Positions 12,401-62,824 of a DNA stretch of 64,000 nt are shown here, piece after piece. Below the pieces are notes generated by a model, which was not told the DNA's origin, ran no database searches, and saw only the letters and a list, made by a program, of their open reading frames with translations. Positions within the stretch are counted from its first letter, which is position 1. The number at the start of each line of letters is the position of its first letter. Made by a program: the position numbers and the translations under genes. Source of the DNA: Macrostomum lignano (taxonomy: Eukaryota); contig NIVC01003824.1 in NCBI GenBank assembly GCA_002269645.1, positions 1 to 64,000 of the forward strand, in the 5' to 3' direction.

Positions 12401-15400
12401 CGGCGGGGGATTCCCGCCCCTCCCACCAATGTCGTGTGCACGCGGTTAGTGTTGGGGGAACCCCGATGCTGACGCAGCCCTGTACAGTGAGCATGCAGGC
12501 CTCGGTGTACCAAGAGGCAGGGACAGAGGGGTACACTGAGTGCGCGGAGAGCCACCATCCCCCTGTAGCTGGGGACAGAAAACAGGCGGCCCCCTGTAGC
12601 AGGATGCGGGGGACAGGGAGCAGCCCTGTCGGAGGGGAACAGAGAGTGCGTGGAGGCAGTAAGGGATAGCTGCCCTGATATTCTTAACTAGGCCCCAACT
12701 ACAGGCTGTAAGTTCGCCTCTCCGCACCGCGGCCCCCGAATCCATCCCGTGTAATCGGCTAGCTCAACAACTGAACTTTATCCAGTTAATAAACAACGAA
12801 TCTGAATAACCCATATTTATTCTTCGATCAATATGAGCTAGCCTAGCGTTATCTTGAATATTTGGCCCGCGGGGCGTAAAATAACCAGTTCTCGATCGAC
12901 TCCGAGGCAAGTTCTGAGAATCTAACGGTCCGTAATACGTTAATTACGGTGATGGCAGCTCGTATGCTACTCATAGTAAGCTTTAAAGCTAATGGACGTA
13001 CATTGAATACGGTGTATGAGCCTGAACCACCGCGCCAAAGTAATGACCGCTTTGACTACGACTTCAACTACTCCCCCCTGGAATTGAGGACCCCGGCAGA
13101 CGGAGTAACCCGGTGGAAATAACGAGATTCGACTACCCGATTTCCCGGCTTTGAAATGCGAACTCAACGCAGGCGGCAGTTCAAAATACTAAATCGCACC
13201 ACCTCGAGCTCGCTCTTTGCTGGCAACTTTGCTCTCGCTCGGTGTAAACCTAGGTACAGTACAGAGAGACTATAGCGCTGCCTGCCGCCGTTTTCCCATT
13301 ACTTTTCTCCGCCCCCACCTCATATATAACAATGTTGCCGAAATGGCGAAACTTACATCAGTTATTGCCAAAGGTTATCTGAAATCTGTCGCCAAAACGG
13401 CAAAACCAACAGGGACAGCAATTTGAACCATGTAAACCATGTAAACAGTTACATGTAGCACGTAGCACTAATTTATTTTATTATAGGCCTGAGTTTACCC
13501 TTTTGAAAGGGGTGAGTCATGAGTGTAAAAGGGAACTGGCGTCACGAGTCCCACTGACTGTCCCTCTAGGCCTAGCGATTAGCATATTTTATATTTGTCA
13601 CCACGCTTCACTGCAGATGGTGCCAAAAATAGATGTATAGGCCTAGGTCTATAGATAGATGTTTTAAAATCTTTTGCTATTAAACTATTAGTGGGGGTAA
13701 AGTTGAACAAATGCTTTTCTATCTGGAACAAAAGTGTGGGTCATAATTTTATACCAATTTGCAATTTATCATTGGCAATGGCTTCTTATGACATAAGTTA
13801 TGTATTGTTGTGCATGGCTTAAGCTATAGAAATAGGGCCTATAGTAGGCCTGTACAGTACAATGCTCTTAAGTTATATTATAGACTAATATTAATAAGCC
13901 TAGGTCTAAGATGTATGTAAGGGCCTAGGCCCTAGTTTGCATATTATTCTTAGTCTTATTAGTATAGGCCTAACTTTACAAAAAGTTATATTTTTGACTC
14001 AACTTTTAAACATTTTTATACTATTATTTTTTGTTTATCATTATTAGTAAAATATTTCTATATACCCAATCCCCAATAATAATATTATGCTCTAATTCCT
14101 AATAATTGCACCATTGTTGCCAAGTTGTCTTGTCTTATACCTTGGTTTTAATTTCTAATGTGATACCTTGATTTCTAATAAGAATTGCCTGCTGAGATTT
14201 GCCTATAATGCAATTTGCCCACAAATAAATTGTCTGCCAAGGTTTGTCCACAATGCTATTTTCTTGCAATAGATTTCCATGCAGTAGATTTTGTTTATAT
14301 TGCTTCCCTAATGTTTAGTAAGTCTTAATAAAGAGATTTACCCAATCAAAACATTTAGGTAATAACTGCATATCAAATGCATATTTTTAGAGAGGGGCAA
14401 TACAAATAGAATCTAGCTGAAAAATATGCTATAGCTAAAAGTATTATAGGCAAACCTCAGTGAGAAACATCTTGGCAGGCAATTAATTCACTTGCAGGAA
14501 AATTGCATTGCAAAAATATCTCTATAGCCAATTTGTTCATAGGCAAAATGTATTGCAGGCAAATCTTGGCAAGAAAAGCTTAGTAAGCAAATCTCAATGG
14601 GCAAATCTTTTGCGAACAATTTGTGTGTAAGTAATTCTCATAGACCTAGGATATAGGCCTACATTCTAAAAAAGATAAATTATTGCAATGTGTAATTTTT
14701 TATTCATCAAAGTTTTAAAGTTTTTGTAAGCATAAGTTGGTGTGCAAAAAATTTACCTGAGCTTAAAGTGGTATGCCAAGATAATACATTGGTATGCCAA
14801 AATCTTTAGAATAGAAATTTCTAGTGTACTAGTAACCTTGAAAAGTGTGGGCCAAGCTAAGGTAAGTTGCAATAATGCCCACCCCAAAAATAGACATAGT
14901 ATACTAAGTAAATGATAAGGCATTTTGTCTTAATAATAGTCTTATTTATTCCCACCATTTACCCAAAATTATGTTAATTTTGCTTAAGGTTTCTTTTATA
15001 GGTAAGAATTTTTGGTCAAAAAGTAATTATTTCCTTGCTTGTTCTCCTTTATCCCTTGTCTAATTTTTATTGTTTTTTTCCAAACCCAGTTTTCTAATGC
15101 CATTATAAGTAGAATAGCATATTATTTGTCTGATTGCTCTTAGAGCCATAATCATGCAAATTGTAAAGGCATGCTATAAACTATTAGACCTCTTTTTGCA
15201 TAAATTATTAAGTTTTGGTTATTCACAATTATAAATCATTTTTCATTGCTTGGTTTTACCTACCATTAATGACTTGGTTGCTTCTTTGATGCAATGAGCT
15301 TCAAAGCTTTGTTTATACAGTATTATATAGTGTAAAATGCTTAGCTAATGATTGAAATATTTATATATCAACTTTGTTATTCCTAAGTATTTTGAATCTC

Positions 15401-15722
15401 AAAACCAAGTCTATTTTCTATTATTTGCTCTTGTGAACTTGCAATGTGTAGAGTATGGCAATAGCTAGGAGATAAATTTTAATAGTGTAAAGAGTTGTCT
15501 AAACCGGATTATTTCATGGTGAAAAGACCCCTGTTTCCACTGCAAATGCATTGACAGCAACTCCTGACATGTGCCTAATGTGTGCAATATGCATGTTTAT
15601 TAGTCATGGAACTTGTCAGAAAAATTATGCTAGAAGTGAAAAATAGCACAATCCCTTGTGCCAAACACTTGGGGTCACTTCTTATTCTTTAGAGTGTTCT
15701 TTTACTGCATCTTCCAGCTCAG

Positions 15723-17912
15723 ATGCCTCTGTTAGGCATACCCAGTCTGTTGTCACCTGAACTGCTCAAGTGCCTAGCAGAGATGGGCCATGGCGACACA
15801 CTGGTACTGGCTGATGCCCATTTTCCTAGCCACAGCATTGCCCAGAAGGCCGGCTGTTCTGTCATTCGCTATGACGGTGTCGAAATGCCTCAACTATTGG
15901 AAGCCATCATGTCTGTGCTGCCTATTGATACCTATATTGAGAGTCCCATTGCACTCATGCAGGTTCGTTGCTTGCTTGGTGGTTATGTTGAGCCTGAGGG
16001 AGACTGGCAAAGTATGCGCGGGGAGACGGAGAGGGTGGGGAGATGGAGAGGGGTGAGAAGACGGAGAGGGGTGAGAAGACGGAGAGGGGTGAGGAGACGA
16101 AGAGGGATGGGAAGACGCAGAGGGGTGGGAAGATGGAGAGGGATAGAGGGATGGGAAGACAGAGAGGGGTGGGGAGATGGAAAGGGGGAGGGGGATGGAG
16201 AGGGGTGACAAGACGGAGAGGGATGGGGAGATGGAGAGGGGTGGGGAGATGGAGAGGGGTGGGGAGCTGGAGAGGGGTGGAGAGACGTTGAGGGGTGGGG
16301 AGTCGGAGAGGGTGGGAAGATGGAGAGGGATGGGAAGACGCAGAGGGGTGGGAAGATGGAGAGGGATGGAGAGACGGAGAGGGATGGGGAGACGGAGAGG
16401 GATGGGGAGATGGAGAGGGATGGGGAGACGGAGAGGGGTGGGGAGACGGAGAGGGATGGGGAGATGGAGAGGGGTGGGGAGATGGAGAGGGATGGGGAGA
16501 CGGAGAGGGGTGGGGAGATGGAAAGGGGTGAGAAGACGGAGAGGGGTGGGGAGACGGAGAGGGGTGGGGAGATGTAGAGGGATGGGGAGCTGGAGAGGGG
16601 TGGGGAGATGGAGAGGGATGGGGAGATGGAGAGGGATGGGGAGACGGAGAGGGGTGGGGAGATGGAAAGGGGTGAGAAGACGGAGAGGGATGGGGAGATG
16701 GAGAGGGATGGGGAGATGGAGAGGGATGGGGAGACGGAGAGGGGTGGGGAGATGGAAAGGGGTGAGAAGACGGAGAGGGGTGGGGAGACGGAGAGGGGTG
16801 GGGAGATGGAGAGGGATGGGGAGCTGGAGAGGGGTGGGGAGATGGAAAGGGGTGGGGAGCTGGAGAGGGATGGGAAGACGGATAGGGGTGGGGAGATGGA
16901 GAGGGGTGGGGAGATTGAGAGGGATGGGGAGCTGGAGAGGGGTGGGGAGATGGAAAGGGGTGAGAAGACGAAGAAGGATGGGGAGACGGAGAGGGGTGGG
17001 GAGATGGAAAGGGGTGAGAAGACGGAGAGGGATGGGGAGATGGAGAGGGATGGGGAGATGGAGAGGGATGGGGAGACGGAGAGGGGTGGGGAGATGGAAA
17101 GGGGTGAGAAGACGGAGAGGGAATCAGGGATGGGGAGACGGAGAGGGGTGGGGAGATGGAAAGGGGTGAGAAGACGGAGAGGGATGGGGAGATGGAGAGG
17201 GGTGGGGAGATGGAGAGGGATGGGGAGATGGAGAGGGATGGGGAGACGGAGAGGGGTGGGGAGATGGAAAGGGGTGAGAAGACGGAGAGGGATGGAGAGA
17301 CGGAGAGGGGTGGGGAGATGGAGAGGGATGGGGAGCTGGAGAGGGGTGGGGAGATGGAAAGGGGTGGGGAGCTGGAGAGGGATGGGAAGACGGATAGGGG
17401 TGGGGAGATGGAGAGGGATGGGAAGACGGAGAGGGGTGGGAAGATGGAGAGGGGTGGGGAGCTGGAGAGGGGTGGGAGATGGAAAGGGGTGGGGAGATGG
17501 AAAGGGGTGGAGAGATGAAAAGGGGTGGGGAGACAGGGCTGGGGAGATTGAGAGGGTGGGGAGACGGAGATGGGTGGAGAGACGTTGAGGGGTGGGGAGT
17601 CGGAGAGGGTGGGAACTACATTTAGAACGGCTGTGGTGAGACAGTATGTGGAGGCATTAAGCATAATATTTGAATTGGCAGGTTGAGCCATCAGACGCTG
17701 ACAAATTCAGTCCCAACCCGCCAATCTGGTCGGACTATGCAAAAGTGCACCCGCACTTTAGCTTATTGACCAGCAGCAGCGGCAAAAGTCGGGTGCAACT
17801 ATTGCCTCGCGAACAGTTTTACAGAGCAGCGGAGAGGGCCTACTGTGTTGTCCATACGGGGGAGCTGGCCCAGTATGCTAACATCATTATCACCAAAGGC
17901 GTTGCTATTTGA
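15723..17912 (+). CDS. FUOM: L-fucose mutarotase (RbsD/FucU family); exons 15723-15962, 17682-17912
   Basis: [26 protein letters not shown] and [29 protein letters not shown] signature segments; phase-0 junction CAG|gttcg ... ggcag|GTT. Confidence 0.93.
16020..17615. repeat. purine/G-rich 18-bp minisatellite (GGGGAGATGGAGAGGGGT-like) filling the FUOM intron
   Basis: period 18 visible; generates the PSPHPS, RRGVG and MERGG pseudo-ORFs. Confidence 0.95.
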
Positions 17913-21824: not shown

Positions 21825-22382
21825 TACTAGACCAAGTCGCCTCAGAGTTGTTTTATAGTCGCTGCAGGTAACGCAGGTTAAATAGGAAAGAAATGGACTC
21901 GAGACAACTGTAAAAAAGCCGAAATGTCACGGTACGAGTACAAGGCGCAAAAAATGTCATCAAAGAGTCGCCTAGAAGAGTCAATTTGAGGCCTTTTATT
22001 GTCTGCGACTCTGAAACGACTCTGGGGCCGTAGAGTCATATTGAGACATGCCATAGTCGCTGTAGAATCACTGAGTTGCGTCTAGAGGGCATTTGCGTCA
22101 CTTTATGCATTAGAACCGCATTTCGCATTTATAACAACTCTATTTAGACTACTTGAGTCAGTAGAAAGTTAAGCGCTAACACAGACGACTTTTGGACGAC
22201 TTTTTCACGACTCTCATGATTCTATAACTCACGTGATGGGCTCTTGTGACTCATCAGTCGCCTCTCCGTCGCATTGAAGTCGTTTGAGTCGTTAAAAAGT
22301 AAGAGTCGCCCCAGAGTCGTTTGAGTCACTATAGTGAGTTGTTTGCGATGAGATGACTCTTTGGCGATTCTTGTCACGGTAA
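21825..22382. repeat. degenerate element packed with GAGTC/GACTC(G) motifs, possible old MITE
   Basis: many dispersed AGTCG/CGACT/GAGTC motifs in both orientations; weak terminal similarity ACCGT...AAGTCGCC. Confidence 0.4.
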
Positions 22383-22630
22383 CGTTTTCAACAAAAAGCA
22401 CTCGATCGGGATGATTCTGCTCTGGGAATCAGCAGAAGAAAAATCCGAAAACCTCAGGGATTTTCGTATGATTCCAGCTACGTCAGAAGCAGAAGAAGAA
22501 GCACTTGATTTTTTAGCAAGATACCTGTCATATAACAAATAGCCTATTTGCTACCCTGTGTTAGTCTGTAAATGTTTTCCATCTAGAAGTTAAACGCTTT
22601 TTTGGACACCAATTATAGGATCGGAATAAA

Positions 22631-22987
22631 GGGGGGCCGTAGCCCAGCGGTAGCGCAGCTGCTCTGGTGTGCCGCGACCCAGGCTCGATTCCAAGTGCAG
22701 CCACATTAATTTGGGGCTGGATTGGAATCTTGGCTTGGCTCGCTTGTGCAATTAACGGCCTTGAGAGCCAACCCCCCAAGGCGCAGTGAAGTGTACATGC
22801 CTAACAATCGATAAAGTTAGGGCCGCTGTACACTCCTGTGTGAGTGTGTGCCTGCGTAACGTATCCGCGCGCTTGTATGCCTGCTCAGGGGAGTCGGCGG
22901 AATGGGCAGTAATGCCTCTCGCCGGTTGTGTGCCAATGACGCTTAAATTGCGCCAGGGTGCACACAACCCCCCTGCCTCTAAAAAAA
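22631..22987 (+). mobile_element. tRNA-derived SINE (family 2) with TSD
   Basis: A box TAGCCCAGCGG, B box GGCTCGATTCC, A7 tail; flanked by AGGATCGGA(A)TAA at 22617-22629 and 22987-22998. Confidence 0.8.
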
Positions 22988-24067
22988 GGATCGGATAACA
23001 TGTTTGAAATCCCATATTCCAGTTTTAATTGATGTTAGCTAATTTTAGCGCTGTACTGGCAATAGAGACTGAAGTTATAAATCAGAAATGTGAAATGTGA
23101 AATGCAATGACTGTTTTGCGCACACTTGGTTGCCAGCCAGAGCAATTTCACAATATGTGCCACTATAGCTATTTAGCAGGTATTAGCAAGGTACCGGTAT
23201 TTTTTGAGACTATAAAAACCCTATGGCTCTAGTCTGTATCATTGACTGCACTGCCAAATTATTGAAATACATAATGTAAACCCCGGAATTGCATCGCCCT
23301 CCTCACATGTTGCTAAGTGTATTGGTTTTAATTATTTTTTTTAATTTTAGCTGCTAAAATAACAGTGTGGATGTATGGATGGATCGGGATGACGGCCTAA
23401 GAACACAAAACGTTACACTAGCCAACTAAAATCTCGATCTTGTGAAGATAATCCACGTTGAATTAGGGAAGGGTTGTAGGCCTAGCTCTGTTGCTATAGT
23501 CAACAAGGATCCCTGTTGGGTCTTGTAGGACTTCAAGTTTTGATTTCAAAGTTATTAATAATCAGTTCTGTTCAGTTCATTGAATTAGACATTGATAGCT
23601 TTAAATCTGTATTAATTAAGCTTTGTTTAGGTCTTAGGCACTAATTTTTGTGTATCTATGCTTAATAAAGTTTACACTGAGTGCTGACATTTGACTCATT
23701 TATTTATCATTGATCCGTACCTAACTTGGTCAGCATGATTTTCTTCATTCTGTGTCTCTATTCACAGTGAGGCTTGCAATGATAGTATCTATATCCAACC
23801 TCCATTGGATAGACCAAATAGTGTGTATTCAGCTTTGCGCTGAAGCGTACAATGAGAAGCGTGTATAAATATTGATAGGCAAAGTGTCCCGTCCATTTGC
23901 TATACGTCAAGACGGACTGGAATTTAACTAAACAGCACCCGCAGTAAATTTTTTATTAACAAAACCTTTTTAAAAACATTTTATTACAGTTTAACTAACT
24001 TGTTGACCTGATAGTTGTCACGCCACAATTATAATCAATTAAAGAATAAACTATCAAGTCTTAATCA

Positions 24068-24484
24068 ATGGAGAAGTTCATCGGCACCTGGCGCCTGGAG
24101 TCGTCAGAGAATTTCGACGCCTACATGAAAGCAATCGGAGTTGGCTTTGTATTGCGCAAAGTTGGCAACACGGTCAAGCCGGATGTGCAGTTTTTGCGCA
24201 ACGAGGACGGCACCTGCACTATGAAGACCATCTCTACGTTTAAGAACTCGGAGATCACGTTTGAGTTGGACAAAGAGTTCGAAGAGACCACCATTGATGG
24301 TAGGAAGGTGCGGAGCACGATGACGATGACCGAGGGTGGCGAGCTGGTGCACAAGCAGGCCAGCGAGCCAGAGACCGTTATTGAACGCAAGCTGCAGGGC
24401 GATGGCGACAACGAGATGGTGTGCACAGTCAAGGCTGGTGACGTGGTCTGCACCCGTGCCTATAGGAAGCTTAATACGGCTTAA
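24068..24484 (+). CDS. FABP: fatty acid-binding protein (iLBP family), intronless
   Basis: GTWRLESSENFDAYMKAIGVG signature, FELDKEFEETTIDGRKV, ligand triad IER...RAY; AATAAA at ~24615. Confidence 0.95.
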   Translation: MEKFIGTWRLESSENFDAYMKAIGVGFVLRKVGNTVKPDVQFLRNEDGTCTMKTISTFKNSEITFELDKEFEETTIDGRKVRSTMTMTEGGELVHKQASEPETVIERKLQGDGDNEMVCTVKAGDVVCTRAYRKLNTA

Positions 24485-25876
24485 CTAAACTGCGTTGGTG
24501 GTAGTTTGAAAATTGAGAACTCTTCAAGAACGTCTTTTAGTAGAAGGCCGGCGCTGCACTCTCAACTTATTCGACTGTTTTTGCGATTATGAATATGCCC
24601 AGTTTCGTTCGTTCAATAAAATGTTAAATCCAATTTAAATTCGTGCCATAAGAACGCCTAGTTATAAGCATTTGTTAAATCTTGAACGTGCTCACTTATC
24701 TTGCTTGCCTTATTAGGCGTTCGAAAGCATTTTGTTAAACTAAGTCCCATTTTGGCGCGAATTTGAATCAGATTTAATTTAAGAAAAGGGACAGCATGAC
24801 TTCCGTTAGACAGTTAAAATGACAGTGCAGTGTATGCAACTACTACTAGTAGTCTTGCGAACACGCAGTATAATGTTATTAAAACTTAATTATTCTGATT
24901 GTTATTATTTACTCTGCTAATCCCAATGGCGTAAAAATGAATAAAAAGCGGAAATTATTGTCACAGCTTATATTAACTATTGGTCACGTTTATATAGTTT
25001 TTGTTTGTCTACTGTTTGTGTCCATTAATTTCTATAATATTTAATATCTTTAACAAGCTTGATACCTATTTATTCGCTTAAGTTGTGTTTCTTTTGTCAT
25101 CCTTAATTATTATTGCCGGTCGAACCATTACTACATGCTAATTGCTTTATGTTTTGCTTGTTCGCTTTTTCTGTCATTATACTCTTTCTAATCCAATGCT
25201 ACTTCAAGTAGGTCTTAAAAGTGTGGTAATCTATATGAGTTCAAATCGTTGTTTCTAGTCCATAACGCTATGAACGTTCAGTTGATGTGCAATATTGATG
25301 TCCCAAGTGCAATAAAATAGACACACGTTTTATCAGTCCATTTTAAAACAAGTTTGAATATTTTACTAGGTTACTGCTTTGGTTCAACACTTATTAAAAT
25401 GTTTCTTAGGCTTCCATGCTAGAATCTATATAGTAAATATGCGTTTTCGCAATCATTTTCAAGCGTGTTTACTTCATATAAAGTAGGTCAAAGTATTTCA
25501 ATAATAGTTGTCTAAGATCTAAGATCTAAGATCCCGCTTATCAGCAGATTTTTCGATAATTAGTTGATTTTCAGACCAACAAAGTTTTCAGTTTTCCAGT
25601 TTAAAAGGACTCAAATTTCCGATTGTTATAAAATCTCCTTATTTTTATGGACTAGTCGTTTTGTTATTAGTTACCTAAACAGCTTGCTTATTCCAGCTTA
25701 TATCTATAGTATCTATATATGTCTAAATATATATATAACGAAACGTTTAAAACAAAAGAAATGACCGCCTTTAACATCTTCAAGGTCGCAAAGCTAATAA
25801 CGGTCGGTTTATAAAAAGAAGTCTGCGAACAGTTACGCGCACAATAAATTTTTTTGACTTTCGATTTTAAAGTTAC

Positions 25877-27154: not shown

Positions 27155-27214
27155 AAAGTTACTGTAGATTTAATGTTAGCTCCGTCAGCTCCATTTTATA
27201 CAATTTCTAGAATA

Positions 27215-27511
27215 CGAGGGGTGTCTCAGAAGTAGTGTCACTTTTGCTTGCTTCCACAAGTATTAATGTGTGTTTAAAAATCATATGCCTTAAAAGTTAG
27301 CGGCTTATTTTAGCTTTCATGCCACGAAAGTCCGATCTTTATAAGTGCTTCCTGCTGTAAGCAGCATGCATTTGTTCGCATACCCTTAGCCATAGAAATA
27401 CACACCGCATAGTGCTCGCTCAGAAGACAGCCACAAGTACAGCTGATCAAGCACAGAGTTAAACACACATTGAAGCAAGCAAACGTGACACTAATTCTGG
27501 GACACCCCTCG
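27215..27511. mobile_element. Tc1/mariner-type MITE, 297 bp
   Basis: TA|CGAGGGGTGTCTCAGAAGTAGTGTCAC ... GTGACACTAATTCTGGGACACCCCTCG|TA. Confidence 0.92.
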
Positions 27512-27939
27512 TAGTTTTTGAACCCGTTGTATTTACATGTACATTTGACATTGTCATGTACATGCCCTTTGATGAGCATATGATACCTTTTAGATTTAGC
27601 GCATATCATGCATATGGGGATAAATTTATATATAGTAACCAGTAATTTACTTTCAACTCGCCTTTACATTGCAAAAAAGTATTCAAAACAGTCGACTGCG
27701 TAAAAGCTGTTATTTTTAGGTTAGCTTGCAAAATCTATTCAGTTTGGTTTGACTTCCCGTATCTTGTTAGTACAAACTAACGACTGTCGTTATGTTTAAA
27801 GTTTACATCGCCAACTTTTTGTGGGCATTTTGAAAGGCCAACTTTCCATGATACACATTAACTTTGCAAATTGCGTCACTCGTTGCACAAAACAACGAGT
27901 TATTAGCTCGTTATTAGCTTTAATAACGAAAAATACCTA

Positions 27940-28365
27940 GTGAAAAAGCATCTCAAGATACACAGAGAAAGAGAACTTAGCCAAAAGCTAGAGAATCAGC
28001 AACATATTAAACTCTACAAAAACGCCTATCTCTACAAAAAAATCTGCAGGCCCGACCTTTCAGATTACTTTCCATGTACATTTAGAAACAAAAAATTCTT
28101 AACAACCCTCCTAAAACTGAAATGCGAGATTACACCCAACTTTTTTTCTCAAGAACCATGTAAAATGTGTGGAGCGCGAAATGGTTCTGACATTCTACAC
28201 TACTTGACCGAATGTCCACAAACTGAAGAGATCAGGAAAAAATACTTCTGTCAATTCCTCTTAAATAGCAATCAAATACACAAGATAGGATATGCTACAA
28301 ATGAAAAAAGAGTCAGAAAAGAACTCACTGGTGTAGCTAAAATATATGAAGTCATGAATAGCTAA
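27940..28365 (+). mobile_element. 5'-truncated LINE ORF2 C-terminus (CCHC region)
   Basis: LLKLKC...CKMCG...DILHYLTECPQTEEIRKKY, typical post-RT zinc-knuckle region of non-LTR elements. Confidence 0.7.
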
Positions 28366-30754
28366 AACAGTTAAACAAACTGAATCAGATACATTAGCAG
28401 TGTAACAAATCCGCTTTTCAGTTGTTTATTCATTTACTGTCTTTTTTAATTCCCTATTTAAATCGTCGTTATTCGTTAAACGTAAAGTTCTTTCGAAGTA
28501 TTGTTTATGTTCGTTTTTTCACGCTTTGAAATATCACGCGCTTTCAAAAATACTACATCTTTTTTTACAAACTCGCTTACCAAAGTAATCTCGCAATTAA
28601 AGCTATACCTCGTAATTTGTACTCATTTTTGTATTAATATTTATACTCGTTGTTAGTTATTAGTCGTCACTTTTCGTCCAAAAATACCGTAAAAATTCTG
28701 GCGCGCTTTCAAATACTTTATCTTTTACCATAACTCTAACTCTTACTACTACTAACTCGCGGCAAATCGTCTTTATAAACTTCTATTTCGAAAACTTTTC
28801 CAAATACATAGCTCTATAATATATTGGCCAAACAGGCTAATTGCCTGAGCCAAATTCTCTTACTACTACTAAAAACGAAACTGAAAAACCGAAACTTAAA
28901 TACTGATACTGATACTGTGTTATAAAATAAACTGTCTTGAAATGTCTTGGTTTAATTTTTTTGCATCTTTGCAAGCAAATATAACTAGACATTTTATCAC
29001 GTCTCATCCTTTTAATAAATATAGGTTGCTGTTGCAGTTTTAGTATTCATTCTCATTTAGCAGAATTTAATTTTTTTTTCAAATCATTTAACAGTTTCCT
29101 GCGTTACCTTAAATTACATTAATCAAGAACTCAATATCACGGTAAGCTTTGATTTATGTATTTTTTGTTTCTATAATTTATCTATTAGGCCCTAATACCT
29201 ATCTATGATATATCTACAATACAATAGACTAGAGATCATATCTGACAATGTGGCCATTGTGGGTTCTGGTTTGTAATTGAAAGTTGGCATATAGTTGGCA
29301 TAATGTTCTACTGACATATCATATTGGCTGTAAGTAATAAGAAACTTGGTTTAAACTTGCTTAAAATTTTTATTCATTTTTTTTTATTTTGGCATATATT
29401 CAATGCCATGCCACATAATGTCAATGAATAAAAATTGAGATTTCAAAATGTGCTTTTTGGCTTTGGTGGGTATACATAGGCACAAACAACCCTAAAAGCA
29501 ACACTAAGACTCCAAAAAGTCTTCATAGAACTTTTTGGAGTTGGTTGTAGAGACTATGATATGTATTTCCCATTCAGATATATTAATCATTTCTTTTATT
29601 AAATATATATTTATATATAAATAGATTTATATAAAATAAAATATTTATATAAAATAAATATTATTAATAATATTTTAATATTTGTTGTCTTAGAGTTATA
29701 ATTTATTTTAAAAGTTAAAGTCTGCTATCTATTGCACCTTGGCAAAAGCTATTGTGGTGCTATAATTTTGTGATAAGCATCTATAGCATCTAAGCATAAT
29801 GCATATAATTTATAAATTATAAATAAACCTATGCCTATAGTGCTTATCTATAGTATGCTAGGGCCTAATACTAGAATAAGTTTATTTGTATTTGCACCAT
29901 GAATTGGAACTATTTTTGTTAGCCCTACACTTTACTATGTTAGATATTTTTCTTTTTCTACTATTGCACCAGAATGTACTGATATAGCACACATTCAAGT
30001 TCAACCCTTTTTTGCTCTGAAATCTTCCTAACTATTGACCTGTGTCACTTATTTGCAGGATCTAAACTTGTACTCTAATAGGGCTTCATAATGCATAGGT
30101 ATACTATTAATATTAGTATTAATAAAACCAGAACCTACCATATTTAGTTTTCATTAAAGTCTAAGCCTTTATAGTAGGAACCAGATACTTTAGTATTAGT
30201 CAGTTTGGTAATAGTCATTTTAAAAAACATTTATTTTGGTGACAAGTTAGGGCCTACTTTGGTACTAAATATGTATGGAAGATTGAGTGTCTATTATTAA
30301 TAAGTTTTTATTTGTGTTTTTAAAGGTAATTAAAAATGATGCTTTATCATTGTTTTATTATTATTTCTTTAAATACCTTCTAGTTCTTGCTTTTATAGTT
30401 ATTGTTAATAATATATATTAATATCCACTTGAAAAAGCCCTTGGCACACTAGTATGGAATTTCTATATAAAATCAAAAATCAAAAGCAAAAGCTTTATTT
30501 TCATAGTTTTAGCTAGGCTTATGGGACATTTTTAAAGCTAAAATGCCATATGAAGAAAAAAGTTTGCATAGAAATATAATCAACTATATTCCATATTGCA
30601 AAGCATATAAATAAATGTTTTAAATTTTTTAACTTACACAAATTGCTAATTTTTGAATAAACTATGACTAACTTTCTATAGTAGTCTAAATTTTATCCTA
30701 TTATTTGCTTTATTGTTTTAAATATAAATATACCCTATTAATCCCATTTTAGGC

Positions 30755-33700
30755 ATGACATTTAGCTTCACAATTCTGGATGAGAACAAACTACAATTCA
30801 ATATATCAGTGCCAAACCATCTGTCAATTCAGTTCTATTCAGCATCTTGCAACAGCTCAATTGCACTTATTCCTCACAGTTTTGGCCTGTTGCAATTGGC
30901 TGATTTATTGAGTTCAGTAATAGGTTTTACATTGCCACCTAATAATCCAAGTGTGATACTAATTGACAAGGAAGGTCACTTAATGACAGTTAAAACTGAT
31001 GAAGATTTAAGGCAGGTCTACTATTGGCATAGGTAAGTGTGAATTTTTTTCACTAATCTCACTATAAAATAAGTCAAGTGCACCTGATTTATGATTTTTG
31101 ACTAGCTGATAGGTGGAACTATGATTTATGACTGACTGATGCACAGGTGCAGTTTTGATTTATGACTGACTGATGAGCAGGTACAGTTATGATTTATGAC
31201 TGACTGATAGGTGCAGTTATGATTTATGACTAACTGATAGACATGTGAAATTATGATTTATGACTGACTGATGCACATGTGCAGTTATGATTTTTGACTG
31301 ACTGATAGACAGGTTAATTTATGATTTATACCAAGCTTACAGAATATAGCTTTAATAACTAAACTATGTAATGACTTCTCCCACACTACGAAGTTTCGTT
31401 AAGCTGCACCAAACGCAGCAGCATCAGCAGCCGCAGACTCGGCAACGCTGGGGCCGTCTCCCGCATCACGTGACTGTCTGGCTGTGCGGCGGGGTCGCCC
31501 TGCTAGCGCCCAGAGCTCTGCAATTCGATGAGCTGACCTCCGCTTGTGCTGACATTCTGACTAGGCTTGGCCAGACCTGCGCTGTTGCCGGTGCCAACCT
31601 AGCACCCGAACTGCTCACCACAATGTCCAATGGGCAGTGTCAGTTGTGCTCCGAGAATTCTGTGTAAGCACACTGATAATTACCTGATTAGTATACAGAA
31701 TGGTGCGATGTGGTTTCGATTGAAACACCTCAAGCATTTGCATGCCAAATACGAGGCTTGTCTGGCAAATTGTCCCCAGAGTCGTTTTAGAGTAGCAGAC
31801 AATATCGCCCCAATAATCGACTCAAATTGACTCTTCTAGGCGACACTCATGGCCTGAGACTACCCTACGCTATGTAATGAGGCCTGAAAAATTTTCTCTT
31901 TTACCGACACCGGCATACTTTTGATGAATCCAGCGATTGCAAGTTGCAGGCTTGACTTAAGTGAATGACGAGGTAACAGAGGTATAGTGACAGAGCTGGA
32001 GACCAAAAATCGTGTCAATAATCACTTTGGATCGCCCCAATAATTGCCTTGGATCTCCACAATAATCGCCCTAAAATCGCCCCGATAATCGCCCTACAAA
32101 TTGCTTCGCCCAAATTGAAAAATCGCCCAAAAGTCGCCAATAATCAACCTAAAAATCGCTCTTATAATCGCCCCAATAATCACCCCAATAATCGCCCCAA
32201 TAATCGCCAAAATAATGACCACAATAATCGCCCCAATAATCGCCACATTAATCGCCCCAATAACCCCCCAATAATCGCCACAATAATCGCCACAATAATT
32301 GCCAAAATAATCGCCACAATAATCGCCGCAATAATCGCCCCAATAATCGCCGCAATAATCGCCGCAATAGTCGGCCCCAATAATCGCCCAAATAATGGCC
32401 TCAATAATCGCCCCAATAATCGCCTAAATAATCGCCACAATAGTCGCCCCAATAATCGCCCAAATAATCACCTTAATAATCGCCTCAATAATCGCCCAAA
32501 TAATCGTCCCAATAATCGCCCAAAAACCGATCCAATAATCGCCCCAATAATTGCCCAAATAATCGCCCCATTTATCGCCCAAATAATCGCCCCAATAATC
32601 GCCTAAATAATCACCACAATGGTCGCCCCAATAATCGCCCAAATAATCGCCTTAATAATCGCCCCAATAATCGCCCAAATAATCGTCCCAATAATCGCCC
32701 AAAAACCGATCCAATAATCGCCCTAATAATTGCCCAAATAATCGCCCCATTTATCGCCCAAATAATCGCCCAAATAATCGCCCCAATAATCGCGTCAATA
32801 GTCGCCCCAATAATCACCACAATAATCGCCCCAATAATCGCCCCAATAATCGCCCAAATAATCGCTTCAATAATCGCCTCAATAATCGCCCCAATAATCG
32901 CCCCAATAATCGCCACAATAATCGCCCCAATAATCCATCCGCATGCCACCCTGCAGCAGTTCGGGCATGCAAACAACCATTCGAAGCGAGTCCGCCTACG
33001 CCAGCATTCGCAGCTCGTCGTCTCCCTGCTGCTGCCAGTTTCAATTCTACAGTCAAGCAGGAGGCAGCGCTGGCTCCGTGCAGATGCCAAGTCAGCCAGC
33101 CTCAGCGGCAGCAGCCTGTTCTGCAGCTGCGGCTGAACCCGGCCAGTCTGAGGAAGCCCTGGCCGCTAGACAATGGTGCTTGGATGACTTTGACTTCGGT
33201 CAGGAAAGAAATTGCCTTGGCTTTGGTCAGTTTGGCACCGTGTACATGGCTATGTGCAAGTGAGCGGTGGGAGATGGGAAAGTGGGATGTGGGAGATGGG
33301 AGAGTGGGATGTGGGAGATGGGAGAGTGGAATGTGGGAGATGGGAGAGTGGGATGTGGGAGATGGGAAAGTGAGATGTGGGAGATGGGAGAGTGGGATGT
33401 GGGAGATGGGAGAGTGGGATGTGGGAGATGGGAAAGTGAGATGTGGGAGATGGGAGAGTGGGATGTGGGAGATGGGAGAGTGGGAGAGTGGGATATTGGA
33501 GATGGGAGAGTGGGAGATGGGAGATGGGAGAGTGGTAGATGGGAGATGAGAGATGGGAGAGTGGAGAGTGGGAGATGCAAGAGTAGGAGAGTGAAAGAAT
33601 GGGAGAGGGAGAGTTGGGAGAGTTGGAGACTGGGAGATGCGAGAGTGAGAGATAGGAGATGGCAGAGTGGAAGATAAGAGACTGGGAGATGGGAGACTGG

Positions 33701-37441: not shown

Positions 37442-37637
37442 CTGCAGCTAACTAACTGCCAACTTGTTAATTTTTTGTTTATTTAAATATGTTTTTGAGG
37501 TGCTGCTAACTTTGTTCTTATTCTACACCGGCTATAGTTATCTGTAGCTAGAGATATATAAATATAATGATGTGCACCATGTTCTGATTTTCATGTAATA
37601 ATTCTGTACATCTTTATGCTCGTTGACCAAGCTTACT

Positions 37638-39506
37638 GAATCCACAGACTCAATCTAGGGTGAGATTTTGAATGCACTGACTCAATCTAGGGTGAGATTT
37701 TGAATCCACAGACTCAAAATATAGGTGACATTTTGAATGCACTGACTCAATCCAGGGTGACATTTTGAATGCACTGACTCAATCCAGGGTGAGATTTTGA
37801 ATGCACTGACTCAATCCAGGGTGAGATTTTGAATGCACTGACTCAATCCAGGGTGAGATTTTGAATGCACTGACTCAATCCAGGGTGAGATTTTGAATGC
37901 ACTGACTCAATCCAGGGTGAGATTTTGAATGCACTGACTCAATCCAGGGTGAGATTTTGAATGCACTGACTCAATCCAGGGTGAGATTTTGAATGCACTG
38001 ACTCAATCCAGGGTGAGATTTTGAATGCACTGACTCAATCCAGGGTGAGATTTTGAATGCACTGACTCAATCCAGGGTGAGATTTTGAATGCACTGACTC
38101 AATCCAGGGTAAGATTTTGAATGCACTGACTCAATCCAGGGTAAGATTTTGAATGCACTGACTCAATCTAGGGTGAGATTTTGAATGCACTGACTCAATC
38201 TAGGGTGAGATTTTGAATTCACTGACTCAATCTAGGGTGAGATTTTGAATCCACTGACTCAAAATTTAGGGTGAGATTTTAAATGCACTGACTCAAAATG
38301 TAGGGTGAGATTTTAAATGCACTGACTCAAAATGTAGGGTGAGATTTTAAATGCACTGACTCAAAATCTAGGGTGAGATTTTAAATGCACTGACTCAAAA
38401 TGTAGGGTGAGATTTTGAATGCACGGACTCAATCCAGGGCGAGACTTTTAATTGCACTGACAATCTAGGTGAGATTTTGAATGCACTGACTCAACAATCC
38501 AGTCTGAGATTTTGAATGCACAGACTCAAAATATAGGTGACATTTTGAATGCACTGACTCAATCTAGGGTGAGATTTTGAAACCACTGACTCAATCCAGG
38601 GTGAGATTTTGAATGCACTGACTCAATCCAGGGTGAGATTTTGAATGCACTGACTCAATCCAGGGTAAGATTTTGAATGCACTGACTTAATCTAGGGTGA
38701 GATTTTGAATGCACTGACTCAATCTAGGGTGAGATTTTGAATCCACTGACTCAAAATGTAGGGTGAGATTTTAAATGCACTGACTCAAAATGTAGGGTGA
38801 GATTTTAAATGCACTGACTCAAAATCTAGGGTGAGATTTTAAATGCACTGACTCAAAATGTAGGGTGAGATTTTGAATGCACGGACTCAATCCAGGGCGA
38901 GACTTTTAATTGCACTGACAATCTAGGTGAGATTTTGAATGCACTGACTCAATCCAGTCTGAGATTTTGAATGCACAGACTCAAAATATAGGTGACATTT
39001 TGAATGCCCTGACTCAATCTAGGGTGAGATTTTGAAACCACTGACTCAATCCAGGGTGAGATTTTAAATGCACTAACTCAATCCAGAGTGAGATTTTGAA
39101 TGACCTGACACAATCGAGGGTGAGATTTTGAAACCACTGACTCAATCTAGGGTGAGATTTTGAATCCACAGACTCAATCCAGGGTGAGATTTTGAATGCA
39201 CTGACTCAATCCAGGGTGAGATTTTGAATGCACTGACTCAAAATGTAGGGTGAGATTTTGAATTCACTGACTCAAAATCTAGGGTGAGATTTTGAATTCA
39301 CTGACTCAAAATCTAGGGTGAGATTTTGAATTCACTGACTCAAAATCTAGGGTGAGATTTTGAATTCACTGACTCAAAATCTAGGGTGAGATTTTGAATG
39401 CACGGACTGAATCCAGGGGGGAGACTTTTAATTGCATTGACAATCTAGGGTGAGATTTTGAATGCACTGACTCAATCTAGGGTGAGATTTTGAATCCACT
39501 CACTCA
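37638..39506. repeat. 32-bp minisatellite (AATGCACTGACTCAATCCAGGGTGAGATTTTG)n between MAP2K5 and TIMMDC1
   Basis: ~58 units, 32-34-bp variants; ~460-bp internal block duplication (marker GCACGGACTC...GGCGAGACTTTTAATT at ~38421 and ~38879). Confidence 0.97.
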
Positions 39507-39637
39507 AGCCAGAATGAAAGCTTTGGATTATAACCTACTGCTTCCAAAGCAAAATGAAAATCCGTTTACAATCAAATCCTGCATTCACTTTTTCAGCCTT
39601 ACAAACCAATTTTGTGACATTCCACATCGAGCTCCCA

Positions 39638-60791: not shown

Positions 60792-62824
60792 CTTAGCGGC
60801 ATGAATTTTATATGATCAATTTGACAAACTTGCAGTGAAATCTTTCAATTTAATGGATTTTAAGCCCTATTATCAACTAATAATTGCCACTTTTAGCTTA
60901 TCGAAATACTCAGTAAAAATTTTTTAAAGTATATTAGCTAAACATCTTAATAGGGCCTAGAATTCCTAACAAAACAGACTAAGTCCCAAAACTTGACTAT
61001 TGGCTTCATAGATTAATGTTATCTAAAAGTGTAATTTAATATTATAGATTAGTGGTCTATCTTTTAAGCCTAATTTATACTTTAATTGCATAGTTTTTTT
61101 CATACCTGATTTTAATATTACTTGCTAGTAAGACATGTTAAAAGTTTATACCATTGCAATCTTCTTAAAAGGGACATATTTTATATGCTTAAGTTTAAAT
61201 TTAAAACTTAAAGTAGGATTAATTACATGGAAATTAATTTGAACCTATAAATATATATTAAATATGAGCTAGAGATCCCAATCTTTTCTATTCTATGTCA
61301 TATACTGTTAAGCATCAAAGTCAATAGAAAATATAAATAATACATTTTATAATTTAGTTTACTTATGCAACTTTTATTTTACTAAGAGTAGCTTTTTGGT
61401 AAATTAATAAAACCAGGTATAGCATAGGGCTGCAAAATTTTTCAAATAGAACAATTCTATAAAATATGCACAGAGAAAATATTATACATAAAATATCAAA
61501 CAAGTGGAAAATAACAAGCCTATTAACTTAGGCCAAGACACACAAAATAGGCCCCTTTTTAAAACAGGACATAAATTAGGTTAACCATTAGCTATAATTC
61601 TGTAAGGCAACTAAATTCCATTATAGATTCAGTATCATAATAATAACAATCATTCATAGTAATAATTCTGTCATTAGAATATTTTTATTGCCAAGAATAA
61701 CTAGCGAGATTGAAAAAAACGAATTGTAGAAGCGTCAAAATTAAAAAAGGAGACTTTCGGGAGTATCATTCATTAGCGCTCGTGTGGTTTATGCCCACAA
61801 CTATAACTATTGAGTGGTTAACTCAGCCTTCAGGGAAGATAAAGCTAAAGCAAAATGACTATAGGCTTTAGCTATTATTTGTTGTTTTAAGTGCTATGTT
61901 ATGTACTCGTACTTCGAGTTAAAGTCAATGAATTCGTGTAATATTGCACTCACGCTCACACTTGAAGTCCATTGGCTCGTCAAATGGTCTATTATGGTGA
62001 ATGCCGAATGGACATTGTAAAAAATTCAGAAATAATCTTGAAATAGGAAACTTTGTTACAAAGTCAAATTTAATTGAAAGTTAATGCAAAATTTTGTTAA
62101 TAAACGTTATAACAAAAATTTCAACGTGAATTCGCAAGAAATGTGAGAGCTGCAAACTTATTTTTTATTTTTTATTCTAACTGTATATACTCTTACTGTT
62201 ATGAGTTTTTGGTGACGACACTTGGTACTTTGTACTGCGTTGCATGTACATCGCCCTCAGTAATCATCACCGATCGATGCTCTCACCTATCAAATCAATC
62301 ACCAATAAGATTCAGATATATGTACTAATAGTTTGCGTGATCTAGCTATACTCGATTTATATAATACAATTTATATCATATAAACGTAAATGACTTGTAA
62401 ATACATTAGGGCCTGTCAACCACACTTATAAGCTCATAAAAATGGAGCCCGAGCCGCTTATGTACACAAATGATACATCATTCTGCTCACAGTGATACCA
62501 GAAAGCTGGGTTTGGCAAAAACCGACAAAATTTGGACTTGGAATAAGGGAGAATAAGCAAGGGGATAATTAGGGACCACATTAATTTTATGAGCTAATTT
62601 TAGTTTATTTATGTATTCCCAACAATGAGGCAGCTCTCCTACACAACTCGCCCTGAGCCAGCAGGAAGCAAGGACCACTAGAAGTTACCGTTGTTTTTTT
62701 ATTTTTTTTGTAACTTCTAGTTCTCCTTAATGGCAATTGGCATGAAGCTGCGCGGACCACAATTGTAGGAGTTGACATCCTGCATGGCCACTCCTGTACC
62801 ACTGCATCGCAGCCTCGACCAACC

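What the first reader, a model, noticed from the sequence alone, without database searches (positions are those of the whole stretch)
29142..31388. 2.25-kb CpG-void domain covering the first intron and the entire PB1 coding exon of MAP2K5
Seen: a by-eye scan finds no CG dinucleotide from just after a donor-like site (CACG|GTAAGC, ~29141) to 31389, although GpC, TpG and CpA are common. The 700 bp upstream has many CGs, and exons 2-6 of the same gene are very CG-rich, so one gene has two opposite codon regimes. Known: germline 5mC deamination erodes CpG, and some invertebrates concentrate methylation in 5' gene bodies of housekeeping genes. Inference: this is a sharply bounded, TSS-proximal methylation or mutational domain of fixed size (~2 kb) that marks the start of a transcription unit. 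It is a genome-wide TSS marker that could be read from sequence alone.
Basis: partly seen in the sequence, partly recalled or inferred. Interest (0 to 1): 0.78.

Follow-up and report, generated by a model that had tools for sequence, protein, structure and literature searches.

The report
CpG-free 5' gene domain, flatworm
A 2.25-kb stretch at the start of a flatworm (Macrostomum lignano) kinase gene really has no CpG at all; it most likely marks a small, sharply bounded patch of germline DNA methylation just downstream of the promoter, but only some genes have one, so it is not a general gene-start marker.

Summary
There is no CG between 29140 and 31389, where about 46 are expected. This is the longest CpG gap in the window.

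The window is Macrostomum lignano contig NIVC01003824.1. The void runs from a conserved splice donor (CACG|GTAAGC, 29142) after a TATA-containing conserved block. It ends 5 nt before exon 2 (31394) of a divergent MAP2K5-like kinase. It therefore covers intron 0, a strongly constrained AT-rich coding exon 1, and intron 1.

It is not a transposon, and the two other subgenome copies keep it (CpG o/e 0-0.1 outside a very young transposon in one copy).

Two more such domains exist:
- 13606-15793 has the same anatomy and sits upstream of the FUOM start codon.
- 60800-61704 lies upstream of a methyltransferase gene.

At least six other gene starts in about 127 kb have none.

Flanking DNA shows no CpG hypermutability. 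In the diverged copy, CpG-creating differences inside the voids are under-represented (5 against 13 expected, P=0.011).

The best explanation is a footprint of a promoter-proximal germline methylation domain. The species keeps DNMT1 and DNMT3, and its methylation pattern is unpublished. No methylation or transcript data could be examined.

The "fixed size" and "genome-wide TSS marker" claims are not established.

The parts
29142..31388 (+). The CpG void as reported: 2247 bp, GC 28.6%, 0 CpG against 46 expected.
28872..29141 (+). Conserved block with TATAAAA (28921) and a putative non-coding exon 0 that ends at the donor CACG|GTAAGC. It still holds 5 CpG (28876, 28890, 29000, 29102, 29140).
   Evidence: 3.7% mismatches to subgenome copy L003, against about 12% (substitutions plus indels) in the void. 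The donor and TATA are conserved. TSS and exon status are inferred only.
29142..30752 (+). Intron 0 (or outron): GC 26%, 0 CpG against 27.6 expected, T>A on the coding strand. The AT-rich spot at 29608-29687 received independent DNA-transposon insertions in the two other copies.
30755..31032 (+). Coding exon 1 of the kinase (92 codons + 2 nt), a PB1-like N-terminus. GC 36%, GC3 0.35, 0 CpG against 9.2 expected. Strongly constrained: 3 differences in 279 bp against L003.
31033..31393 (+). Intron 1 (donor AG|GTAAGT) with a CpG-free 34-bp tandem array at 31089-31329. The first CpG (31389) lies in the last 5 nt before the acceptor.
31394..31663 (+). Exon 2, where CpG resumes: 18 CpG, o/e 0.74, GC 60%, GC3 0.66.
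27894..28871 (.). Copy-specific dispersed-repeat insertion, probably a 5'-truncated non-LTR element, with a CX2CX9HX4C ORF end and a CpG-rich AT-rich tail. TSD is AAAAC. It sits about 50 bp upstream of the TATA box and is not part of the void.
13259..13605 (+). Conserved 5' block of the FUOM gene: GC box CCGCCCC (13309), TATATAA (13323) and donor G|GTGAGT (13512).
13606..15793 (+). Second void: 2188 bp, GC 32%, 2 CpG (14613, 15505) against about 51 expected. It runs through strong acceptors (15692, 15718) into the first 70 nt of the FUOM coding exon (ATG 15723).
60800..61704 (-). Third, shorter void: 905 bp, GC 25%, 1 CpG against 14 expected. It ends about 10 bp upstream of the start codon (60791) of a minus-strand MTS-type methyltransferase gene, and is kept in copy L004 at 38233-39036.

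Best explanation
The void is the mutational footprint of a small, sharply delimited domain of dense germline CpG methylation. The domain begins about 100-200 bp downstream of the promoter of a subset of M. lignano genes. It extends about 1-2.4 kb through the first intron or introns and any exon lying inside.

Proposed mechanism (steps 2 and 3 are inferred; no 5mC data were available):
1. DNMT1 and DNMT3 are retained in this flatworm.
2. They keep every CpG in the domain methylated in the germ line.
3. 5mC deamination, which is faster in AT-rich DNA, converts CpG to TpG/CpA about 15-40 times faster than CpG is re-created. With about 283 TpG+CpA sites the equilibrium is about 2-5 CpG, which matches the 0-5 seen in the three subgenome copies.

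Sequence outside the domain (promoter block, exon 2 onwards, downstream introns, neighbouring intergenic DNA, young repeats) is unmethylated and keeps CpG o/e near 1.

Shown: the void, its anatomy, its conservation, the absence of CpG hypermutability in the flanks, and a deficit of CpG-creating differences inside it. Inferred: methylation, the TSS, and the germ-line timing.
For: - 0 of 46 expected CpG while GpC o/e is 1.63. The TpG+CpA surplus (about 54) is about equal to the missing CpG. GpC is the standard control that methylation does not affect (PMC5915941).
- Among AT-rich (<33% GC) unique 400-bp windows, CpG o/e is bimodal: 10 of 19 are below 0.2 and the rest are 0.4-3.
- All three subgenome copies keep the void. 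In L003 it has 8 CpG in 4.07 kb against 92 expected. In L002 every CpG but one lies in a very young 2-kb transposon.
- Flanking DNA shared by the copies shows no CpG hypermutability. CpG-site transitions are 24/349 against 81/1502 at other G/C sites, and CpG-changing differences are 23 observed against 19 expected.
- Inside the voids the diverged copy shows 5 CpG-creating differences against 13.0 expected (P=0.011); controls show 12 against 10.5.
- The constrained coding exon 1 shares the regime (0 of 9.2 CpG, GC3 0.35), while exons 2-5 of the same gene do not.
- The older transposon inside the L003 domain has 3 CpG against 21.7 expected. The very young one in L002 has 22 against 35.
- M. lignano retains DNMT1 and DNMT3, has low global 5mC, and no methylation pattern is published for any free-living flatworm (PMC11292947, PMC9246332, PMC10658182).
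- A second void has the same TATA / exon 0 / donor / 2.2-kb void / ATG anatomy.
- All three voids show T>A on the coding strand, as transcribed introns do.
Against: - No methylation data were examined. The only WGBS paper (Wasik 2015) is not held.
- CpG o/e of 0-0.07 is far lower than in known methylated invertebrate genes; the low mode in honeybee is 0.47.
- Methylation confined to the first about 2 kb after a promoter runs against the usual exclusion of DNMT3 from H3K4me3 chromatin (my own knowledge).
- The void edges coincide with splice sites, which a chromatin domain need not do.
- Void 3 shows no TpG surplus (o/e 0.83).
- The ongoing-suppression test is modest (P=0.011). Its window-lineage half (0 against 9.4) is circular, because the void was ascertained on that copy.
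- Voids are also the most AT-rich unique DNA and evolve about twice as fast, so an unrecognised context effect is possible.
Confidence: 0.5

Rival explanations
1. Fossil footprint. The domains were methylated in an ancestor and lost their CpGs then. Nothing CpG-specific acts on them now, and they have simply not yet regained CpG.
For: Global 5mC in adults is reported as low. With no CpG left there is nothing to methylate. The copy L003 has re-acquired 5 CpG in the void-1 homolog and 14 in the void-2 homolog. The suppression test is only P=0.011.
Against: Across about 6% per-lineage divergence, about 13 CpG-creating differences were expected in L003 and 5 were seen, while the flanks behave neutrally. 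A transposon that entered the L003 domain after the copies split is itself down to 3 CpG of 21.7 expected, although its starting content is unknown.
Confidence: 0.15
2. Selection. First-intron and promoter-proximal regulatory DNA of these genes is kept CpG-free, for example to stay invisible to the methylation and CpG-binding machinery. It is built from an AT-rich vocabulary of binding sites.
For: The voids share over-represented words. GGCCTA/TAGGCC places 19 of its 32 window occurrences in 9.5% of the window (P about 4e-12). TGCCAA occurs 17 times against 4.7 in controls. There are conserved islands inside intron 0. Exon 1 is constrained even at synonymous sites. The edges fall at splice sites.
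Against: Most void DNA evolves faster than its flanks, with many indels and transposon insertions. Site-by-site selection against every possible CpG is therefore implausible. The motifs are not conserved base for base in L003. The TpG/CpA surplus points to a mutational origin.
Confidence: 0.12
3. Methylation-independent, transcription-coupled cytosine deamination in a promoter-proximal zone (R-loop or single-stranded DNA). This would resemble the roughly 2-kb zone of somatic hypermutation downstream of vertebrate immunoglobulin promoters, but with CpG preference and acting in the germ line.
For: The domains start 100-200 bp after the inferred TSS and end about 2.4 kb downstream in two unrelated genes. 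Transition divergence at G/C sites is raised in the voids, 11-26% against about 5%. The domains are AT-rich with T>A on the coding strand.
Against: There is no G-over-C skew in voids 1 and 2 (G 269 / C 273; G 359 / C 345). GpC and GGCC are enriched, not depleted. Loss is strictly CpG-specific, and TpG and CpA are raised almost equally (1.27 and 1.19), so both strands are hit. No such CpG-specific deaminase process is known in flatworms (my own knowledge).
Confidence: 0.08
4. Not a biological domain. The tract would be a single CpG-poor transposon or foreign insert, an assembly artefact, or chance in AT-rich DNA.
Against: P(0 CpG) is at most 1e-20. The tract has no similarity to anything else in the window and no terminal repeats. 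It contains a constrained coding exon spliced into the annotated protein. It is present in three independently assembled subgenome copies. AT-rich neighbours have CpG o/e 0.9-1.8.
Confidence: 0.02

Closest known systems
Mosaic (gene-associated) germline methylation of invertebrates, read from CpG o/e bimodality (Suzuki and Bird model; honeybee, Ciona, oyster, cnidarians; PMC5915941, PMC4378273, PMC8857923)
   Same: CpG is depleted while GpC is unaffected. There is a TpG/CpA surplus. The landscape is bimodal, with sharply different neighbouring domains. DNMT1 and DNMT3 are present in the species.
   Different: The unit here is a 1-2.3 kb promoter-proximal, mostly intronic tract rather than a whole gene body. 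Depletion is essentially complete (o/e 0-0.07, against about 0.3-0.5). The rest of the same gene, including its exons, is CpG-normal. Methylation was not measured.
5'-biased intragenic methylation of holometabolous insects (bees, ants, wasps, silk moth; my own knowledge)
   Same: Global 5mC is low. Methylation is concentrated in the first 1-2 kb of the transcription unit of a subset of genes, just downstream of an unmethylated promoter.
   Different: In insects the signal is strongest in exons and leaves only moderate CpG depletion. Here introns and an exon are equally void. The phylum is different, and nothing is known about which histone marks are involved.
Vertebrate CpG islands
   Same: Promoter-anchored domains of about 1-2 kb whose CpG content differs sharply from the surroundings, because their germline methylation state differs.
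   Different: The sign is inverted. Here the background is CpG-normal and the promoter-proximal domain is CpG-free and AT-rich. The domain starts after the first exon, not over the TSS.
Somatic-hypermutation zone downstream of immunoglobulin promoters (AID; my own knowledge)
   Same: A mutational domain that begins 100-200 bp after the TSS and fades about 2 kb downstream.
   Different: That process is somatic, targets the WRC context, and is strand-biased through single-stranded DNA. Here the process is germline, strictly CpG-specific and shows no G/C skew.
Fungal repeat-induced point mutation (RIP)
   Same: AT-rich tracts with sharp borders and loss of one C-containing dinucleotide.
   Different: RIP targets duplicated DNA, depletes CpA (in Neurospora) and raises TpA. 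Here the tract is unique DNA, CpA is raised (1.19) and TpA is about 1.0. No RIP machinery is known in animals.

Membership tests
Germline-methylation CpG-depletion footprint | CpG o/e far below 1 while GpC o/e is not reduced | tested here: met
   CpG 0 of 46 expected and GpC o/e 1.63. Voids 2 and 3 have CpG o/e 0.04 and 0.07.
Germline-methylation CpG-depletion footprint | Compensating surplus of the deamination products TpG and CpA | tested here: met
   Void 1 has TpG 1.27 and CpA 1.19, a surplus of about 54 against 46 missing CpG. Void 2 has 1.24 and 1.16. Void 3 does not show it (0.83 and 1.12). AT-rich controls are 0.87-1.01.
Germline-methylation CpG-depletion footprint | Region-specific CpG hypermutability or continued suppression of new CpGs | tested here: inconclusive
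   Flanks show no hypermutability. Voids show 5 CpG-creating differences against 13.0 expected in the independent L003 lineage, P=0.011. The window-lineage half of the test is circular.
Germline-methylation CpG-depletion footprint | The organism has maintenance and de novo CpG methyltransferases | not tested
   Taken from the literature only: DNMT1 and DNMT3 are retained and global 5mC is low (PMC11292947, PMC9246332).
Germline-methylation CpG-depletion footprint | 5mC actually present on the remaining CpGs of the domain | not testable with these tools
   No bisulfite or nanopore data are available. Wasik 2015 is not held.
   Conserved TATA-containing blocks end in conserved donors immediately before voids 1 and 2. 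No transcript-end data were examined.
   Only 3 non-repeat voids of 600 bp or more occur in about 127 kb. The PAP2, FABP, SLC5 (two paralogs), lectin-like, Tim17-like and 1556-aa gene starts lack one.
   From the TATA box to the first CpG after the void is 2468 bp (void 1) and 2471 bp (void 2). Void 3 is only about 0.9 kb. n=2, and the anchors were chosen after the fact.
CpG-poor transposable element | Terminal repeats or TSD, other copies, or transposon ORFs; presence/absence polymorphism between copies | tested here: not met
   There are no other copies in the window or loci and no terminal repeats. The tract is present in all three subgenome copies and includes a constrained host exon. True transposon insertions nearby are recognisable and separate.
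MAP2K5 (PB1 domain + MAP2K kinase) | Kinase domain of the MAP2K class | tested here: met
   Pfam Pkinase E 5e-48. The best solved-structure matches are MEK1/dSOR1, E 1e-28. Identity to anything in the database is only about 34%.
MAP2K5 (PB1 domain + MAP2K kinase) | N-terminal PB1 domain | tested here: inconclusive
   Pfam PB1 E 0.002 (exon alone) and 0.03 (whole protein), both below the 23.6-bit cut-off. The only PDB hits are MAP2K5 PB1 at E 0.7. No homolog was found in 1.84 billion representatives. The AlphaFold model has pLDDT 51, though its beta-beta-alpha-beta-beta-alpha order is compatible with PB1.
RIP-like hypermutation | Acts on duplicated DNA; CpA depleted and TpA raised | tested here: not met
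   The sequence is unique. CpA o/e is 1.19 and TpA 1.02.

The most novel reading that the evidence does not exclude
M. lignano would have a previously undescribed methylome architecture that works as an inverted CpG island. In a subset of genes, a ruler-like domain anchored at the core promoter is so densely methylated, or otherwise CpG-mutagenised, in the germ line that every CpG has been extinguished. The first intron(s) and any exon inside are affected, while the promoter block and the rest of the gene stay CpG-normal. The domain ends about 2.47 kb from the TATA box in both fully documented cases. Such domains would be readable from sequence alone and would mark one class of promoters.
Probability: 0.2. 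Interest if true: 0.7.

Novelty: new variant of a known kind. Interest (0 to 1): 0.45.

Why it matters
A 2022 review (PMC9246332) states that no genome-wide methylation pattern is known for any free-living flatworm. M. lignano is the transgenic, regeneration-competent model that still has DNMT1 and DNMT3.

If these CpG-free tracts are methylation footprints, three things follow:
- They predict where the little 5mC in this animal is aimed: a narrow promoter-proximal zone of some genes. That is unlike the whole-gene-body pattern taken as ancestral for bilaterians.
- They would explain the low global 5mC, because the targets have run out of CpG.
- They give a sequence-only handle on one promoter class, useful for choosing regulatory regions for transgenes.

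There are also practical consequences. One gene can carry two opposite codon and CpG regimes. CpG o/e computed per gene would miss domains of this size.

Tried and rejected
- **Transposon or foreign origin.** Self-BLAST of the void against the window found only its own 34-bp array. The repeat finder found no terminal repeats. Rejected.
- **Whole-window repeat scan.** One search was swamped by microsatellite arrays and was of little use.
- **Window against L002.** Only 0.4-0.7% substitutions, too few (9) for any spectrum test.
- **Window-lineage CpG-gain test.** 0 observed against 9.4 expected. Rejected as circular, because the void was ascertained on this copy. Only the L003 half was kept.
- **Sampling random M. 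lignano loci through the mariner-type transposase at 43568-44180.** The search returned no M. lignano proteins. One capped search was wasted.
- **Exact look-ups.** My reconstructions of the methyltransferase and lectin-like ORFs were not on record.
- **Published promoter sequences.** Those of Wudarski 2017 are stored truncated at 400 nt, so they could not serve as independent 5' regions.
- **Wasik 2015.** This is the only bisulfite data set, and the paper is not held.
- **AlphaFold model of exon 1.** Made without an alignment and too poor (pLDDT 51) for a fold search.
- **Non-coding RNA.** Rfam and tRNA scans found nothing, so the conserved block before the void is not a known RNA gene.
- **Pfam on ORFs in 1-13 kb.** Nothing was found.
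- **Ruler test in L003.** A 1.35-kb transposon there has pushed exon 1 further from the promoter. The few CpGs are not distributed differently before and after +2.47 kb. Uninformative.


Full report
**1. Observation.**
Direct counting shows no CG between 29140 and 31389, a gap of 2249 bp. It is by far the longest in the window.
- The tract 29142-31388 has GC 28.6% and 0 CpG against 46 expected.
- GpC o/e is 1.63, TpG 1.27, CpA 1.19 and TpA 1.02.
- The chance of this is about 1e-20 from base composition, and about 5e-30 at the CpG density of neighbouring AT-rich DNA.
- The later exons of the gene have CpG o/e 0.47-1.04.

**2. Where the window comes from.**
An intronless FABP gene in the window is encoded on GCA_002269645.1 contig NIVC01003824.1 at the same coordinates. 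The window is the first 64 kb of that contig. NIVC01 is the Macrostomum lignano Mlig_3_7 assembly (PMC5730564). The assembly contains three subgenomes (PMC10733133). I recovered all three copies of this locus:
- the window itself;
- L002, which differs by 0.4-0.7% in substitutions;
- L003, which is 87-93% identical in BLAST.

I also recovered L004, another stretch of the L002 contig. It is homologous to the right part of the window and to sequence beyond it. L005 is an older paralogous segment.

**3. Anatomy.**
The annotated 571-aa product (P0218) confirms the following structure:
- Coding exon 1 is 30755-31032, with donor AG|GTAAGT.
- Exon 2 starts at 31394.
- The first CpG after the void (31389) therefore lies in the last 5 nt of intron 1.
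- The left edge is a donor-like site, CACG|GTAAGC (29142).
- In the diverged copy L003, the 300 bp before and across that site differ by only 3.7%, and the site itself is identical. Just downstream, the sequence differs by 10-25% and has indels.
- The conserved block contains TATAAAA at 28921.

I infer a core promoter, a non-coding exon 0 of about 190 nt, and then intron 0. Alternatively intron 0 is an outron. The ATG sits 3 nt after a strong acceptor, and 39% of M. lignano genes are trans-spliced (PMC5730564). The void therefore equals intron 0 + coding exon 1 + intron 1, exactly.

Exon 1 is a real, strongly constrained exon. It shows 3 differences in 279 bp against L003, two of them synonymous. 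Yet it has GC3 0.35 and no CpG (9.2 expected). Exon 2 has GC3 0.66 and exon 5 has 0.84. The 'two codon regimes in one gene' claim is correct.

**4. The upstream CpG-rich stretch.**
The stretch 27894-28871 is a copy-specific insertion with a 5-bp target-site duplication (AAAAC). Both other copies have an empty site. Its ORF ends in a CX2CX9HX4C knuckle, and another copy lies elsewhere. It is probably a 5'-truncated non-LTR element. The native flank 27155-27893 still has normal CpG, so the boundary stands.

**5. Not a transposon or artefact.**
- The void has no other copy in the window or loci and no terminal repeats.
- No RNA family matches.
- All three subgenome copies contain it.
- In L003 the homologous 4.07 kb has 8 CpG against 92 expected. 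That stretch is enlarged by a 1.35-kb DNA transposon and a longer 34-bp array.
- In L002, all CpGs but one lie in a very young 2.04-kb DNA transposon with clear terminal inverted repeats.

**6. More such domains.**
After masking tandem arrays, about 127 kb of distinct M. lignano DNA (window, L004 1-38 kb, L005) holds only three unique CpG-free tracts of 600 bp or more.
- **Void 2 (13606-15793; 2 CpG against about 51 expected)** repeats the anatomy. A block conserved in all three copies carries a GC box (13309), TATATAA (13323) and a consensus donor G|GTGAGT (13512). The void follows, then strong acceptors, then the FUOM start codon at 15723.
- **Void 3 (60800-61704; 1 CpG against 14 expected)** ends about 10 bp upstream of the start codon of a minus-strand methyltransferase gene. 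Copy L004 keeps it.

All three voids abut a coding start in the correct orientation and show T>A on the coding strand. In contrast, the starts of the PAP2, FABP, SLC5 (two paralogs), lectin-like, Tim17-like and 1556-aa genes have no such tract. The feature marks some gene starts, not gene starts in general.

Among AT-rich unique 400-bp windows, CpG o/e is bimodal: 10 of 19 are below 0.2 and the rest are 0.4-3.

**7. Mutational evidence.**
Between the window and L003, the CpG-normal flanks (20650-25876) show no CpG hypermutability:
- Transitions occur at 24 of 349 CpG-site positions, against 81 of 1502 other G/C positions.
- CpG-creating or CpG-destroying differences number 23 observed against 19 expected from context-free rates.

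Inside the voids the same calculation gives 5 against 22.4. The window half of that (0 against 9.4) is circular, because the void was ascertained on the window copy. The fair test is the L003 lineage: 5 against 13.0, Poisson P=0.011. Controls give 12 against 10.5. So there is moderate evidence that CpGs are still being suppressed inside the domains and only there.

A simple balance supports the size of the effect. There are about 283 TpG+CpA sites, and G:C-to-A:T changes run at about twice the A:T-to-G:C rate. That gives an equilibrium of roughly 71/k CpGs, where k is the hypermutability factor. For k = 15-40 this is 2-5 CpGs, which matches the 0-5 observed (inference).

Void DNA also diverges about twice as fast as its flanks. 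That argues against site-by-site selection.

**8. Explanation.**
The CpG-specific loss, intact GpC, matching TpG/CpA surplus and regional specificity are the classical footprint of germline 5mC (criteria as in PMC5915941). According to the literature, M. lignano keeps DNMT1 and DNMT3 and has low global 5mC. No methylation pattern is known for any free-living flatworm.

I therefore favour a narrow promoter-proximal methylation domain in a subset of genes (confidence 0.5). The nearest analogue is the 5'-biased intragenic methylation of holometabolous insects. The differences are that depletion here is complete, mainly intronic, and confined to about 1-2.4 kb.

Rivals:
- a fossil of past methylation (0.15);
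- selection for CpG-free regulatory introns (0.12);
- a methylation-independent transcription-coupled deamination zone (0.08), weakened by the absence of G/C skew and by enriched GpC and GGCC;
- transposon, artefact or chance (0.02).

**9. Gene identity.**
- The kinase domain is MAP2K-like. The best solved relatives are MEK1/dSOR1 at E 1e-28. It is only about 34% identical to anything in the protein database.
- Exon 1 matches Pfam PB1 below the cut-off, at E 0.002 alone and 0.03 in the whole protein.
- Its only PDB hits are the MAP2K5 PB1 domain, at E 0.7.
- It has no homolog at E<=0.001 among 1.84 billion representatives other than its own protein.
- The single-sequence AlphaFold model is poor (pLDDT 51) but has a PB1-compatible order of strands and helices.

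'Divergent MAP2K5-like' is reasonable. 'PB1' is unproven.

**10. Unexplained.**
- The distance from the TATA box to the first CpG after the void is 2468 bp for the kinase and 2471 bp for FUOM. This is striking, but n=2, the anchors were chosen after the fact, and void 3 does not fit.
- The word GGCCTA/TAGGCC (consensus TATAGG(G)CCTA) has 19 of its 32 window occurrences in the three domains (P about 4e-12). In L004, 3 of 7 occurrences lie in the void-3 homolog.

**11. Verdict.**
The feature is real and sharply bounded, and the subgenomes keep it. Methylation is the best explanation but is untested. The generalisations (fixed size, genome-wide TSS marker) are not supported by the roughly 127 kb available.

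Interest is moderate. It is a new variant of the known methylation-footprint phenomenon, in a phylum where the pattern is unknown. It can be tested directly with existing bisulfite data.

Noticed in passing
window 27894-28871: Copy-specific insertion of a dispersed repeat. It has a 5-bp TSD (AAAAC), an ORF ending in a CX2CX9HX4C knuckle and a CpG-rich AT-rich tail. It sits about 50 bp upstream of the kinase gene's TATA box. L002 and L003 have the empty site, and a 90% identical copy lies at L002 4-459.
   Followed up: partly
window 29608-29687; L002 13289-15326; L003 12889-14237: The same AT-rich, palindrome-rich spot in intron 0 received two unrelated DNA-transposon insertions in the other two subgenome copies. 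Their terminal inverted repeats are TAGGGACTCCAGTGAG and GCAAAATCCA. The older insert has 3 CpG of 21.7 expected, and the very young one has 22 of 35.
   Followed up: partly
window 13484-14656, 29186-30251, 60954-61548; L004 38386-38980: The word GGCCTA/TAGGCC (consensus TATAGG(G)CCTA) is concentrated in the three CpG-free domains: 19 of its 32 window occurrences fall in 9.5% of the window. TGCCAA/TTGGCA is also about 3.6-fold enriched over AT-rich controls.
   Followed up: partly
window 28921 to 31389 and 13323 to 15794: The distance from the TATA box to the first CpG after the void is 2468 and 2471 bp in two unrelated genes. n=2, and the comparison was made after the fact.
   Followed up: partly
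window 30755-31032: The exon-1 peptide has no detectable homolog in 1.84 billion protein representatives apart from its own protein. The exon is nevertheless almost invariant between subgenomes, synonymous sites included.
   Followed up: yes
window, whole: Roughly a third of the window is tandem arrays with periods of 4-34 bp and lengths up to 2 kb, mostly inside introns or between genes. Some units contain CpG and keep it (for example ATAATCGCCCCA at 32164-32935). Others have none (for example the 32-mer at 37637-39507, which fills the space up to the next gene start at 39605).
   Followed up: partly
window 43568-44180: A mariner/SETMAR-type transposase pseudogene with one frameshift. The closest relatives (64-70% identity) come from short metagenome and read-archive contigs. 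None is from M. lignano.
   Followed up: partly
window 44251-44688: An ORF with an ALK/LTK glycine-rich domain (Pfam E 1e-8). It is followed by a 29-bp tandem array and is not in the gene calls seen.
   Followed up: no
window 57079-57816 (-): An ORF of 244 aa with a signal peptide, which by eye looks like a C-type lectin plus PAN/apple-like domains. It lies between the SLC5 and methyltransferase genes and has no gene on record.
   Followed up: partly
L004 10001-51514: The annotated SLC5 gene model in the homologous contig spans 41.5 kb and nests the methyltransferase gene. This is either a very distant 5' exon or a fused model.
   Followed up: no
window 2377-2534 with 52129-52304; 21064-21355: Long-range inverted copies of a roughly 160-bp element (90-99% complementary, 50 kb apart), and a 102-nt-arm hairpin (96% complementary). 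Both are probably small transposon remnants.
   Followed up: no
window 24068-24484: An intronless FABP (lipocalin-fold) gene with GC3 0.74 and CpG o/e 1.03. It is present in all three subgenome copies.
   Followed up: partly
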